NCBI GenBank assembly: GCA_030704615.1
Contig: CM060731.1
Coordinates: 5,456,001-5,520,000, forward strand
Source of the DNA: Takakia lepidozioides
Taxonomy: Eukaryota > Plantae > Bryophyta
Length of the DNA: 64,000 nt
Direction: 5' to 3'
Shown here one piece after another: positions 16,059-42,403 of the stretch. A program made the position numbers and the translations under genes. How positions within the stretch are numbered: position 1 is the first letter of the stretch; the number at the start of each line of letters is the position of its first letter. Under the pieces are notes generated by a model. That model did not search any database. It was given only the letters and a program-made list of their open reading frames with translations, and was not told the DNA's origin.

Positions 16059-18781
16059 TTTTTCTTTTTCTTTTTTTTTTTAAAAACAGGGGGATATGCC
16101 CTGGTTAACTTTATATAAAATGTTTTGGGGGCTAGCCCTAATACATTATTTAGGATTATTTGGGGAAAAAAATTAAAACCCCTAATTGCCATAAGGCACA
16201 CTCACCGTAATCAGTGGATGGAGAACTTAGCCGGAGAGCGACTCCTTTGAGCAAGTAGCAAGACAACTGTGGCGACCAACTGTCTCAAGCGATCAATCAG
16301 ACCATTAATAGTAGAATTGGGATATAATTAGGCTAATCCGATCAGGAAGTTTCCTAGGGATTAGCGACCAGCCAATACCACCGGCTAATTATTGTTCAAC
16401 GGTAGTTGAGCCTAGAAGTTGTCGCTGTGGATTTTATGTGTTTCCAGTTAACCTCCCGGTCGAATTCCGGGGAAGTTTGCGTTGGATGTCTGCACAAAGT
16501 TTAGCCCAGGCCTTACGGGATTCAATACCCAGATCATAGAAGATGAGTGCCATGAATGAGGATATTGAGGTAGTGTTTCCAGAGAAGGTTATGGCGCATC
16601 TGGCTTCCCATAGGTGCCATAGGACGGATCCTCTAAGAGCTTCGAATACAGGGCATGGGAGAGATTTCTATTTGGATTGAGGGTTGTAATTGAGGAGGAT
16701 GTCAGTAACTGATAGAGGCCTGGGGCTCCAGTGTCTATAAAAATCCTTTACAACTGGCCAGATGGTACGGGGGGCCAGGCATCCCAGAAACGCATGCTCT
16801 ATGGTTTCCAGTATACCCACGGGGCAGCATGCGCAGAGGAGCGAGGAATGGAATTGAAGCCACTCCCCCACTTTCAGTACCCTGTTAGCAATCTGCCAGA
16901 GGAGGGTCGCCACCTTGGCTGGGCGTGTCTTGATCCAAATAGATCCCCAGATAATAGACCATTTCTCATTAAGAAATCCGTGGTGGTGCCACCTTGTGTC
17001 CCACTTAGATTGTAATGGCTTAGCTTTCAATAGGGCTTTGTATCCCTGCTTTGTAGAGTAGGTGAAGAATGGGTGGGGACCACTGGGAAAGCTCCATGGC
17101 CATTCCCCCAAATCCAGGGGAAGCTCAGCCAGAGGTCTGCCTAGGATCCAAGAGAATGTATTAACCTGCAGCCATTCGGCGGTGGTTTCCAGGGGTGGCG
17201 GGATAGGGTTCATGTCCTTGGAAGGAAGACTCCATCCACAGATTCTGACCGGGGTTAGGGGGGTCCAGGGAATGTGAATGATTTGATCTGAGAGGAGCTG
17301 AAGCAGCATTGAGCCCTGATTGATGGAGAAGGGGAAGATGGCATGATGCGAGGCAGTGGATTCTTGTACAAAGAAGATCGAGAGGCTGCCTCAGAAGATA
17401 GCCAAAGCCCAGTGGTTGCGCTGAGGCAACGTCGGTCCCAACTACAGGGTGGTTTGCCATAGGGTAGAGATGGATCTCTTGATTTCATCCAGGCCTTTGA
17501 TAGCTCTCGCTTTCCCAACCATTATGGCGATGGTGTCCAGTGATTTCCAGTCCCCATTTGCCCATAAATGACCGATCTGTGAAATTCCAAGGTGATCCTA
17601 GGCTGACCATCGTTTTGCCTCCTTCTTTTGGATAGCCGTTGGAAAGTTAGAATTGAGAAAGAGGCTTTGGCGAATGGTTTCGTAGAATGATGTAGGGTCT
17701 GCCTTTTTCAGGAATTTCCTTAGCTTGTCCCAGGCTCTCCATATGGTTTGCCAGAGCGGGGACCCTACCACCTTGTGTTCAAACCCTTGTGTCGCCCATC
17801 TAAAGGAGGGGTTCCATCTGGCTTTTTTGAGGGCTGAAGCCTGCATCATGTATGGGGCCACAAGGAACTTCCACCACCCCCCTTCTGGGCCAAGAAAACG
17901 AGGAATCCATTTCCCCAGGAGAGCCATTATCTGGGTTTCAGGATCTAAAACCCCCAATCCACCTAGTTTTTTGGGCATACAGATTTGTTTCCAAGCTACT
18001 TGTGGCCTTTTCCCCTGCCCAGCTTTTTGTGCGCCCCATATGAAGTTCCTTAGAAGGCGGGTGATCTCCCTGATATGCTTGGTGTCCGGTCTCCAGGAAG
18101 ATGCAAAGTACCAGATTCTAGCCTCTAAGATTTGTTTGGCTATAAGAGCTCTTCCTGAGATGGACAGATGTTTAGAACCCCAATATGAGAACCCTAAACC
18201 CTAAACCCTAAACCCTACAACCACCCTGGGTCCAAGGGGGATTACAGGGAGAGCGTTGAGACAGTCTCACGTCTGGCGCTTAAAGATTGGCTAGGATTGG
18301 GGCAAATCTCTGATCGTCCGAAAGGCCAATGCCAAAGGTGTATCCCAGCAGTATTGTAGATTCACCTGGCTGAAGCCATTTGAGGCCATGTTGGGAGCCC
18401 CAGGTTGGTGGTGGGCCCAAGGTGGTAGCCGTGAGGTCACCCACCAAGAGAGCTGAAGTCTTGTTCCAGTTCACCTTGAACCCAGAGGCCGAGCAGAACG
18501 TGTTGAGTGTGTTTGCCGTAGAGTCCAGATTGGCCGTATCTGCCTGGAGCATGAGGAAGGTATCATCCACAAACATAGAATCTATTATGTAGGTTGCCTG
18601 GTGGGTGTAGAAATTAGTCACCAAGAGGCCCTTGATGGCTGGGTTGTTTTGTAGCATATAGCCAAGAGAGTCGGCCACTATCAGGAAGAGGAAGGGGGCC
18701 AAGGGGCATCCCTGCCTTACAGATCTATGGAGCTCAAAGGGTTTGGAGAGTGCCCCGTTTATAATAACTCTGCTTGTGGAT
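16059..18781 (-). mobile_element. L1-clade LINE, decayed ORF2 3' half with poly(A) tail
   Basis: RT motifs SVRQGCPLAPFLF and SMFVDDT (18280-18780). VAWKQICMPKKLGGLG and zf-RVT region (LLWQIANRVL..C..ETIEHAFLGC). T-run at 16059-16081 is the tail. Contains stops and frameshifts; 5' part cut off at 18781. Confidence 0.9.
18190..18275 (+). repeat. Interstitial telomeric repeat (AAACCCT) x ~4 plus ~58 bp of non-L1 sequence, inserted in L1 ORF2
   Basis: 18190-18217 is AACCCT(AAACCCT)3A. The L1 frame reads PILANL on one side and SYWGSKHLS on the other. Confidence 0.9.
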
Positions 18782-19179
18782 GGGGGGTTGCTATTCCATG
18801 AGCTCATGAGCCATGAGCGGGCATGGCTCACCCATGAGCCGCAAAGTAACACACTTCGAATTTTGGCAGATTTTTTTCGGGCCCAAAACTATAAAATAAT
18901 CGAAAGTAGTATAAGAAGAGAAGGTTTTCGAAGATTTCCGCGCTCATGCTGGAAGCACTCCGCTCATAAGTACCAGTGTCCGCTCATGACTTGGAGCCCA
19001 GGCTCATGGACCGCCAGGCCAGGTCATAGAAAAACTGAATTCTGGGCAATAACGGCACCGAAATTATCCCAGAGGAAGAGACGCAAGCGGAATTAGGATC
19101 CGGGTTTGCAGACTCCGAAAACGCAATGGCGACCTATAACCGTGGATAGTACTGTTGCAGAAGTGCAGGATGGTTGGGT

Positions 19180-19477
19180 ATAACGGCGCCGTAATTGGGC
19201 ACAGGAAAAGAAATAGCCGGCTGAAGGCTTGGGAGTGAAGCCAATAACGGTGCCGAAATTGGGCTCCGCCAACCAAATACCCGGCTGAAGCCTCCGGAGT
19301 GCAGCCAATAACGGCGCCGAAATTGGGCCCCGGAAACCAAATACTCGGCTGAAGCCACCGGAGTGCAGCCGATAACGGCGCCAAAATTGGGGCCCGGAAA
19401 CCAAATACCCGGCTGAAGGCTGGGGAGTGCAACCAATAACGGCGCCGAAATTGGGCTCCGGAGAGCAAATACCCGCC
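19180..19477. repeat. Tandem repeat, 64-bp unit x ~4.7
   Basis: Units start at ~19180, 19243, 19307, 19371, 19435: AATAACGGCGCCGAAATTGGGCCCCGGAAACCAAATACCCGGCTGAAGCC..GGAGTGCAGCC. Confidence 0.9.
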
Positions 19478-20169
19478 TTACGTTGAAGGAGTTTTGCAAA
19501 CTCTCCTGAAACTGGTGCGGATTTGTCTAATAAAAGCACACATGTCGGAGGAAATAGAAGTTCTGCCGCATACGACATTGACAGTGCAGCAATGATATAT
19601 CCCTCTTCCGCCGGCCTCACATGGGCATGTTTTTTTTATTTTGGTTATGTCTATAAATGGATCCGAGGAAAGCATACATTGTGTGGAGATACACGGGTAT
19701 TGTGGCCTATTTCAGCGTCGTTATTGGTCTGTATACTGCATAGTGCTTCCTTGTTACTGCTCTTCATTCAATTTGTGGTGATTTCGCAGCCCATCCTGGC
19801 GTTTTCGTCCACCTTTATGAGAAGACTCCAATTTGCTACCAATACATTGTCAGTGTTCTGCAAATGTGATGCTTTTACAAGATTGCTAGTTTTGTGTCCC
19901 AGTGGGAAGGGTCCTACTGCACATTCTAGCATTTGCATACTGCACCTTGTGCAAACAACAATCCATACGACAAAGGACACATCCCAGCATACTGGCAGTG
20001 AATTGCAAAAAACCTTAACAGAAGATTATCCAAGCATGTATATTGGCACAGGGAAGCTACTTGATTTCCGAATCAAAATGTATGTGCCATGAGTGTCGGC
20101 GAGTCGAAACATGTCTACTCTAGCATGCATGACCTATGGTCCCCTCGCCCAAGAAGAAGGAACTCGAAC

Positions 20170-40719: not shown

Positions 40720-42403
40720 TTTTGTTGGGGAGCCTCTTCAATGCTGTTTGTGCACGCCGTTGCAGGGGGCCGGATTCTCCTTTGCAGAGATTCCTCAATT
40801 TGGCTCTGCCACTCCCATTTCACTACCGTCAATTCCCTCCTCCTGCAATCTCAATTTGAAAGGTTCAGCCGCACATCCTTTGGCAGAGAAGACAGTTGAC
40901 ATTTTATACCAACCGGTAGATTCCACAACATGATGAAAAGTTACACTCACCAGCAAACCATTTAAAAGCCATCACGATGCTTCCCATCATAACTAGAATC
41001 TTTTCAACAAGACACTGAGAGAAATGACCAAAATCGACTCAAACAACGACATCCTGGAAAACCACCTGTCTCTACAGTTCGTGTGTGTGTGAGGAATCGG
41101 AGGACGTACGTGGAATTTCAATTTTCACGATTGAGGACGTTGTGATCTTGGGCATATGGTTGAATGTGTATGAACTGTGTGCATTGAAGTGTGAACAACC
41201 TGACTACAAGGCCAGAACCTGCGCCACTTGTCTTAGGCCATCTCCAAATCACGTTTCGGCGGACAATCCCGTTCCGTTGCCATGAAATTGCACCGTGGCG
41301 GGAAGGGAGTCCATTTGTGTGGCTCTATCACCATGGCGGGAGGGGAGCATGTTAAAAATAGAGCATTGCCCTGCCACTTCACTCATTTGTTGTTTGCACC
41401 TTCTTCCACCATCTTTCTTACTTAATTCTGATTCTTGCAATGCTGCCCTTGAGACGGCAACTGCAAGTGACCGGATCCTTTGATCGTCGCATTCAAAGAC
41501 ACTTACGTGTAGCAGATCGCAGACCCCCAAATGCCTGGAGAGAAAGCCAGACGGCAGTCAATGCATGCACGGTTGTTTTGCACTGGTTGGGATGGAGTGG
41601 GGTGCAGAGGAGGCGTGTTGTGCCCGAGTTTGCATGCCTAGCATCCTGCAGCCAGCGGCTTTTGCACGTTGGGCAGCAGTACCCTCTGCTGTATGATTAC
41701 CATTTGTGGTAAAGACTCACCGGCCTCCCCTGTCCACTTGGGTCTTGGGACAACGACTTATGGAGTATGTAGACAAAGTTGCATGTCGCGCAGGTACATC
41801 AAAATCTCCCATGTAACATAAACCCATTTCTCATTCATGCTGCATGTGATCCACGGGGTAATTTCCATGTTCTCCCAGCTGATGTGGGTTCGCAAATTCT
41901 CGGTGTGTAGGTGTGTGTGCGAGGACCTCAACCTGGCATGGTGCGATGGGTGTCGAATGGACCCCTCTACGATGGGAGAACCACTACTACTGAATCATTT
42001 GGCAGAGCAACCACTACAGTTGAGTTTGTTTTTGCTGAATCATTTGGCAGAGCACTGTGTTCACTTCTCACATCTCATGCGCATTTTCTCCAAGAATGCA
42101 TGTTAAAGCGGAGCCATACACGGGATCATGCAGTGTGTTTCCTTCGCCTCATTTGAACGAAAAAAAATTAAGGATCCATGTCAGTTGTGTGAATCACTAC
42201 ATCTAGTTGTCTGGAGATTGTAAGTGGTTTAGGGTTTTAACATCTCAAGTCGAAAGGCCATAGTGTCGGATGCACGACACGTGTTCATATTTGAGATCAA
42301 CAAACGGCCGGATCTTCACTACAGATTGGGGGGGTGTGTGATCACACTCCCCTCCTTGTCCTTCTTTCCTCCTTGCATGTCCTTGCGTCTTCCCGCGTCT
42401 TTG

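What the first reader, a model, noticed from the sequence alone, without database searches (positions are those of the whole stretch)
18190..18275. Possible telomerase footprint: telomere repeats joined to a probable reverse-transcribed piece of telomerase RNA at a break in an L1
Seen: an ~86-bp insert with no TSD splits L1 ORF2. Plus strand: AACCCT(AAACCCT)3A CAA CCACCCTGGGTCCAAGGGGG ATTACAGGGAGA GCGTTGAGACAG TCTCACGTCTG. Recalled from memory, not searched: land-plant telomerase RNAs have the template CUAAACCCU, then a short hairpin, then AUUAC.GGG and GCGUU(U)GAGA.AG-like blocks, in this order. Inference: on the G-rich strand the unique 58 nt come first and then run into TTTAGGG repeats. That is the product expected if telomerase primed a broken end ~60 nt 3' of its template, read through to the template and translocated about three times before end joining. 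Similar TERC-flanked interstitial telomeres are known in vertebrates; I know of no plant example. The insert could also reveal this species' TR gene.
Basis: partly seen in the sequence, partly recalled or inferred. Interest (0 to 1): 0.85.

Follow-up and report, generated by a model that had tools for sequence, protein, structure and literature searches.

The report
Telomere-repeat patch in a broken L1
A dead jumping gene in this plant was broken and mended with an 82-letter patch of telomere repeats joined to a piece of a repeated sequence; the piece may come from telomerase RNA, but I could not show that.

Summary
At 18191-18272 an 82-bp insert (26 nt of perfect CCCTAAA-type repeats plus 56 unique nt) splits the ORF2 of a 5'-truncated L1-like element on the minus strand. 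Three paralogous L1 copies in public runs lack it. There is no target-site duplication, 1 nt is lost, and each junction shows 1-3 nt of microhomology. That is the signature of end-joining repair with a templated filler.

The telomerase-RNA origin is not established. The unique piece belongs to a multi-copy family: at least 14 distinct contigs in the DNA run continue past the window's junction, in two diverged but homologous subfamilies. One copy lies in a 1.2-kb contig with no telomere template. Its 14 nt at that spot match two telomere units in purine/pyrimidine pattern only.

I fetched Arabidopsis TR for comparison. Similarity to it is suggestive at best. Rfam has no plant TR model. The species' own TR gene was out of reach.

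This scan has already noted, on other DNA of this genome, a candidate TR gene, short TR footprints, and telomere-primed retroelements whose units carry template-like sites. Those units are the main rival source.

My odds are roughly 0.45 for a multi-copy TR-like unit, 0.3 for genuine TR, and the rest for other explanations.

The parts
18273..18852 (-). L1-like ORF2, reverse-transcriptase part, upstream of the insert. The element is 5'-truncated near 18900.
   Evidence: Pfam RVT_1, E 4.5e-11. The translation shows the FVDD motif. A 1-nt extra A at 18282 creates a stop at 18280-18282 relative to the paralogs.
16671..18190 (-). The same ORF2 downstream of the insert, ending in the zinc-binding domain.
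   Evidence: The frame starting at 18188 stays open for about 195 codons. Pfam zf-RVT, E 5.8e-09, at 16671-17309.
18191..18216 (+). Telomeric C-strand tract, ACCCT followed by three AAACCCT units, with no mutation. The A at 18190 could belong to the tract or to the L1.
   Evidence: An unrelated contig in X5 and X21 carries the same 26-nt tract with the same start, followed by the same ACAAC.
18217..18272 (+). 56-nt unique piece (the 'module'), of the A-type subfamily.
   Evidence: It is unique in the window. In run X1, 3 contigs match through 18275 and then continue differently from the L1. Another 11 contigs match to 18265 and then continue with a sequence 63% identical to the A-type continuation. 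A 1215-nt X6 contig holds 18219-18265 with 5 mismatches.
18273..18275 (+). CTG shared by the source family and the L1: junction microhomology and a possible priming site.
   Evidence: The A-type contigs read through 18275 before diverging, and the L1 paralogs read (T/C)TGGCGCTT at this point.
18250..18274 (+). Predicted 10-bp hairpin inside the module. The right-hand junction falls in its 3' arm.
   Evidence: RNA fold. The whole 68 nt is not unusually stable (z = -0.81).

Best explanation
Shown: a double-strand break in a dead L1 was repaired by end joining, with an 82-bp templated filler.

Inferred: the template was a member of a multi-copy family in which a telomere-repeat-complementary site is followed directly by the 56-nt module.

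In the one copy seen with its upstream sequence (B-type), a short palindrome precedes that site. This is an architecture like telomerase RNA.

Proposed sequence of events:
1. The L1 end ...CAG-3' on the minus strand paired with CUG in the template.
2. A polymerase, most simply a reverse transcriptase on RNA, copied the module and then the telomere-like site up to its 5' boundary.
3. The new 3' end (...AGGGT) was ligated to the other L1 end.

I think the template was most likely one of the multi-copy TR-like units that this scan has noted in this genome's telomere-targeting retroelements, rather than the single cellular telomerase RNA.
For: - The empty site in three L1 paralogs, no TSD, 1 nt lost and microhomologies all point to end-joining repair.
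- At least 14 distinct contigs share the module and diverge after it into two homologous subfamilies (19 of 30 identical by my hand alignment of the two loose ends). One lies in a 1.2-kb contig of a low-coverage run.
- The B-type copy has, exactly where the tract sits here, 14 nt with 4 matches, 10 transitions and 0 transversions to two telomere units. That purine/pyrimidine pattern occurs at 3.9e-5 per position in the window.
- That 14-mer is preceded by an ACAAG-AG-CTTGT palindrome.
- A second, unrelated locus has the same 26-nt tract with the same end and the same ACAAC. This fits a source with a fixed boundary.
- Earlier scan notes, which I did not verify, describe units with a template-like site and a USE+TATA promoter in this genome.
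Against: - I never saw the A-type source upstream of the module. So I do not know whether it has about 1.5 or about 3.7 repeats.
- No hammerhead core (CUGANGA ... GAAA) is present on either strand of the 116 nt available.
- The retroelement identity rests on other agents' unverified notes.
- Only 3 A-type contigs were seen.
- RNA rather than DNA as the template is not shown.
- Contig depths over the module are very high but unreliable. A contig's mean depth can be inflated by telomere words.
Confidence: 0.45

Rival explanations
1. Telomerase primed the broken L1 end about 56-59 nt 3' of the template on its own RNA. It copied through to the template, translocated about three times, and the product was then end-joined. 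The A-type sequence is the species' telomerase RNA.
For: - One enzyme and one template explain the whole insert, and the orientation and register fit.
- CTG microhomology sits at the proposed priming site.
- The tract ends at ACCCT in two independent loci, as expected for dissociation at a template 5' boundary. That phase coincides with the start of the 14-nt template-equivalent in the B-type copy.
- The other locus carries only ACAAC after the tract, like a short footprint.
- Collinear 5-mers are shared with Arabidopsis TR downstream of its template, mostly in the A-specific part (k=5: 0.2% of real window segments score as high).
- Vertebrate TERC-ITS loci are a precedent (PMC8537989).
- Earlier notes s1-472841 and s1-472962 claim TR footprints in this genome.
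Against: - The family is multi-copy with a diverged 11-contig subfamily, which is unusual for TR.
- Smith-Waterman scores against Arabidopsis TR are no better than shuffles.
- The chain statistic was chosen after seeing the blocks and vanishes at k=4 and k=6.
- No pseudoknot of the kind described for bryophytes is evident in the 97 nt available.
- No promoter, terminator or RNA evidence was obtained.
- The identical tract length in two loci is not predicted.
Confidence: 0.3
2. DNA-templated filler. During end joining, the broken end invaded and copied about 82 nt from a genomic locus where telomere repeats already abut the module, such as a junction in a stack of telomere-associated elements or an older footprint. 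No reverse transcription took place at this site.
For: - Filler DNA copied from ectopic sites is common at plant break repair (established knowledge, not tested here).
- Microhomologies lie at both junctions.
- The module is multi-copy, and contigs joining the tract and the module appear to dominate the DNA run.
Against: It does not explain why two independent loci end the tract at the same base. No source locus was seen.
Confidence: 0.15
3. Chance juxtaposition, assembly error, or a tRNA-derived SINE fragment.
For: The module has GGGAGAGCG, and its A-type continuation has a B-box-like GTTCGAGACC.
Against: - ARAGORN finds nothing even with relaxed settings.
- The tract is perfect and 0 are expected by chance.
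- The run holds 59-71% of the stretch's sampled words.
Confidence: 0.05

Closest known systems
Vertebrate TERC-ITS loci (Nergadze 2007, PMC2246262; PMC8537989, 2021)
   Same: A short telomeric tract (6-205 bp there, 26 bp here) joined to a 25-98-bp fragment (56 bp here). It was inserted at a break with deletions and microhomologies, and some cases lie inside LINEs. The Xenopus locus likewise uses the region right next to the template.
   Different: In vertebrates the fragment was matched to the species' TERC gene. I found no plant case in the papers searched.
Land-plant telomerase RNA (Fajkus 2019 PMC6765143; Fajkus 2021 PMC8287931)
   Same: A CUAAACCCU-type template is followed by a structured region. 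For bryophytes a hairpin boundary element is described immediately 5' of the template, and the B-type copy has a palindrome there.
   Different: No significant alignment to Arabidopsis TR. Promoter, terminator, pseudoknot and expression were not shown. The family is multi-copy.
Telomere-associated endonuclease-deficient Penelope-like retroelements and their non-coding partners
   Same: Multi-copy, adjoined to telomere repeats, and carrying telomere-complementary sites.
   Different: No hammerhead core and no RT gene were seen in the sequence available. This copy is internal, inside an L1, not at a chromosome end.
Filler DNA at plant double-strand-break repair (own knowledge: Gorbunova and Levy 1997; Salomon and Puchta 1998)
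   Same: No TSD, small deletion, microhomology, and a templated patch.
   Different: The patch holds telomere repeats in register with a flank, which points to a special template.

Membership tests
TERC-ITS-type insertion | Short telomeric tract at an internal site, absent from an empty site, with end-joining marks and no TSD | tested here: met
   The empty sites are paralogous L1 copies.
TERC-ITS-type insertion | The flanking fragment matches the species' own telomerase RNA gene | not testable with these tools
The rest of the genome cannot be read here.
Land-plant telomerase RNA | Single or low-copy gene with about 1.5 template repeats | tested here: inconclusive
   At least 14 contig variants in two subfamilies. 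The region upstream of the A-type module was not seen.
Land-plant telomerase RNA | Sequence or structure homology to a validated TR | tested here: inconclusive
   Arabidopsis TR was fetched. Alignment is not above shuffles. The 5-mer chain gives p of 0.002 to 0.8 depending on k. Rfam cannot see even Arabidopsis TR.
Land-plant telomerase RNA | USE+TATA Pol III promoter, T-run terminator, expression | not testable with these tools
   The source locus is not available. There is no module contig in X5 or X21, but Pol III TRs are rare in such data.
Hammerhead-bearing telomere-primed retroelement unit | Hammerhead catalytic core | tested here: not met
   By eye, neither strand of the insert plus the 30-nt continuations has CUGANGA ... 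GAAA. There is no Rfam hit. Only 116 nt were available.
Hammerhead-bearing telomere-primed retroelement unit | Multi-copy, next to telomere repeats or a telomere-complementary site | tested here: met
tRNA-derived SINE | tRNA-like fold | tested here: not met
   ARAGORN finds none, even at relaxed thresholds.
Non-LTR (L1-like) retrotransposon (the host element) | RVT_1 followed by zf-RVT in one ORF2 | tested here: met

The most novel reading that the evidence does not exclude
This bryophyte has a family of telomerase-RNA-like RNAs built as boundary hairpin, then telomere template, then a conserved module.

Members with a canonical template are copied at chromosome breaks, leaving footprints such as this one. 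A larger subfamily has kept only the purine/pyrimidine pattern of the template, which could still wobble-pair at 12 of 14 positions with the telomeric G strand. That subfamily rides in a retroelement.

In other words, the telomere-targeting retroelement units would be derived from, or mimic, telomerase RNA.
Probability: 0.15. Interest if true: 0.85.

Novelty: new member of a known kind. Interest (0 to 1): 0.45.

Why it matters
If the piece is telomerase RNA, this would be a plant counterpart of vertebrate TERC-ITS loci. Its 56-nt read-through would show that plant telomerase can prime far outside its template at a break. It would also give part of the species' TR sequence.

If the piece comes from a TR-like retroelement unit, it shows that such RNAs are also used away from chromosome ends. 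Either way it is a datable scar of break repair. On present evidence it is one ordinary-sized filler insertion whose source is unresolved.

Tried and rejected
- Rfam scan of 17000-19500 gave nothing at the insert. This is uninformative, because Rfam also misses a genuine Arabidopsis TR.
- No second copy of the module, of either continuation, or of the L1 exists in the window.
- A metagenome scan for a 23-mer of the module found 0 hits. I used the second scan to fetch Arabidopsis TR.
- Species identification and L1 paralogs by protein search failed. The best hit had 57% identity, the second search gave none, and there was no exact gene on record.
- Bryophyte TR sequences are not held in the papers' texts or supplements.
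- RNA folding of the piece is unremarkable.
- tRNA or SINE origin was rejected by ARAGORN.
- A hammerhead reading of CUGAUAA ... GAGAC in the A-type continuation was rejected, because two invariant core positions are wrong and helix II is too weak.
- Copy number from contig depth was considered and dropped. The tool warns against it, and contig means inflated by telomere words can explain the figures.
- The search of earlier findings by sequence was blank.

Full report
WHAT IS THERE

It holds a perfect telomeric C-strand tract followed by a non-repetitive piece. No other tract of this kind exists in the 64-kb window, and shuffles expect none.

The surrounding DNA is one ORF2 of a non-LTR retrotransposon on the minus strand:
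- Pfam RVT_1 lies at 18283-18852.
- The frame resumes at 18188 and stays open for about 195 codons.
- zf-RVT lies at 16671-17309.

The element lacks the first RT motifs. Upstream it abuts a 64-bp tandem array, so it is 5'-truncated.

THE EMPTY SITE

No paralog of this L1 is in the window, so I laid contigs of four public runs of the same organism on 17800-18700.

A 740-nt contig of X5 and two contigs of X1 are other L1 copies, about 90-95% identical to this one. They pass from 18188/18190 straight to 18283, with 10-12 letters between that are simply the L1 sequence. The window also carries that sequence, at 18273-18282.

The pre-insertion sequence was therefore ATATGA(G/A)AG(T/C)TGGCGCTT. This gives:
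- an insert at 18191-18272 (82 bp);
- one L1 base lost;
- no target-site duplication;
- an A at 18190 that is ambiguous between the L1 and the tract.

In the paralogs the reading frame runs on across the site. This is the signature of end joining with a templated filler, not of transposition.

WHERE THE UNIQUE PIECE COMES FROM

The same call shows that the piece is not unique in the genome.
- A-type: in DNA run X1, 3 contigs match the window through 18275 and then continue differently from the L1.
- B-type: 11 contigs match to 18265 and then continue with another sequence.

Aligned by hand without gaps, the two 30-nt continuations share 19 of 30 bases, 12 of them in the last 14. They are diverged homologues. 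The window's insert is A-type.

Because A-type reads CTG at 18273-18275, as does the L1, the right junction has a 3-nt microhomology.

A 1215-nt contig of the small run X6 carries 18219-18265 with 5 mismatches and the B-type continuation. Upstream of the module it has no telomere repeat.

Contig depth over the module in X1 is hundreds of times that of the L1 flanks. I do not use this figure. The tool warns that depth is one mean per contig, and a contig holding a few pure telomere words would be inflated.

AN ODD FEATURE OF THE B-TYPE COPY

The 14 nt immediately before the module in X6 differ from the window's last two telomere units by 10 transitions and no transversion. The purine/pyrimidine pattern is identical. 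That pattern occurs at 3.9e-5 per position in the window.

Four bases further upstream lies a palindrome, ACAAG-AG-CTTGT. So the B-type copy has the layout hairpin, 14-nt template-equivalent, module.

The 14-mer could still pair with the telomeric G strand at 12 of 14 positions if wobble pairs are allowed. That is my inference. It could not template telomere repeats.

A SECOND LOCUS

Contigs of about 1.1 kb in X5 and X21 (runs guessed to be RNA) contain the same 26-nt tract. It starts at the same ACCCT and is followed by the same ACAAC, then by unrelated sequence.

Only matches of 31 nt or more seem to be listed, so selection inflates this coincidence. Even so, the same tract end in two unrelated loci suggests either a fixed boundary in the source or a preferred stopping point.

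TESTING THE TELOMERASE-RNA READING

Rfam finds nothing at the insert. But I fetched the Arabidopsis TR gene from two metagenome contigs through a published primer. It shows USE, a TATA-like box, the template and the C-rich end. Rfam does not detect it either, so that blank is meaningless.

In Arabidopsis TR:
- AUUACUGGG starts 30 nt after the template;
- GCGUUU follows 12 nt later;
- the recalled GAGA.AG block is absent.

In the insert the first two blocks occur in the same order with shorter spacing.

Statistical checks:
- Local and semi-global alignments score no better than dinucleotide shuffles.
- A chain of collinear exact 5-mers is unusual. For the insert alone, 15 of 2000 shuffles reach its score, as do 3.3% of real window segments.
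- For the insert plus its A-type continuation, 0.2% of real window segments reach its score.
- I chose this statistic after seeing the blocks. It falls to 7% at k=4 and to nothing at k=6.
- The blocks lie mainly in the A-specific part, and the B-type scores at chance.

I rate this as suggestive only.

The pseudoknot described for bryophyte TRs is a 5-bp GC-rich P2, a 7-12-bp P3 and a U-bearing loop. By eye I could not find it in the 97 nt available. The piece instead folds into a plain 10-bp hairpin, with no unusual stability overall.

RNA runs X5 and X21 hold no contig of the module. Pol III TRs are known to be rare in such data, so this says little.

THE RIVAL SOURCE

Earlier notes of this scan on other DNA of the same genome describe several related things:
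- a candidate TR gene (s1-472962);
- short TR footprints at healed ends (s1-472841);
- a recurrent CTCACAAG linker (s1-481617);
- large arrays of telomere-primed, endonuclease-less Penelope-like elements, whose units are said to carry a USE+TATA promoter, a hammerhead and a telomere-complementary site resembling a telomerase template (s1-446158, s1-476922, s1-476134 and others).

I could not read any of those loci. The reverse complement of the linker differs by one base from the CTTGTGTG just upstream of the template-equivalent in the X6 contig. This hints that the B-type copy belongs to that system.

A multi-copy family with this layout fits such units at least as well as it fits a single TR gene. 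Against the retroelement reading, I see no hammerhead core on either strand of the 116 nt available, and ARAGORN rejects a tRNA-like SINE.

MECHANISM

Shown: a break in the L1, and repair with an 82-bp patch whose two parts are contiguous and in register.

Inferred:
1. The minus-strand end ...CAG-3' paired with CUG of a template molecule.
2. It was extended through the module and the telomere-like site to a boundary at ACCCU.
3. It was then ligated to the other end.

If the source has only about 1.5-2 repeats, as the B-type layout suggests, the 26-nt tract needs reiterated copying and therefore a telomerase-type enzyme. If the source has a tract of about 26 nt, simple copying suffices, from RNA or from DNA.

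COMPARISON AND VERDICT

The closest known case is the vertebrate TERC-ITS. It has the same size range, the same end-joining marks, and some cases inside LINEs. The Xenopus locus also uses the region adjoining the template.

Membership requires a match to the species' TR gene, which I could not test. My odds:
- multi-copy TR-like unit as source: about 0.45;
- genuine TR: about 0.3;
- DNA-templated copy of a pre-existing junction: about 0.15;
- artefact or other: about 0.05;
- the remaining 0.05 is unassigned.

The finding is real and mildly interesting. Its most exciting reading is open and could be decided by one genome-wide BLAST.

PROCEDURAL NOTES

The single read-laying run used 901 letters. 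No sequence was altered or reconstructed.

Noticed in passing
window 19180-19478: A tandem array of 64-bp units, about 84-85% alike, lies next to the 5'-truncated end of the L1. It caused a spurious weak Rfam tsr1 match.
   Followed up: no
window 18280-18282: This L1 copy has one extra A relative to its paralogs, which creates a TAA stop on the minus strand just beside the insert.
   Followed up: partly
window 18548 and 18583-18585: Several X1 and X21 contigs of L1 paralogs leave the alignment at these places (5, 2 and 3 X1 contigs, plus one X21 contig). Other copies therefore carry different sequence or rearrangements there.
   Followed up: no
runs X5 and X21, contigs of 1156 and 1105 nt (matching window 18191-18221): What looks like a transcribed locus holds the same 26-nt telomeric tract plus ACAAC between unrelated flanks. 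The two contigs diverge 15 nt after the tract, which may be alternative splicing.
   Followed up: partly
L002 2960-3290 (minus strand) and L001: Two JGI metagenome contigs carry the Arabidopsis thaliana telomerase RNA gene with its USE (TCCCACATCG) and a TATA-like box. Rfam release 15 has no family that detects it.
   Followed up: yes
window 42225-42236: A telomere-like 12-mer with one mismatch, consistent with chance.
   Followed up: no
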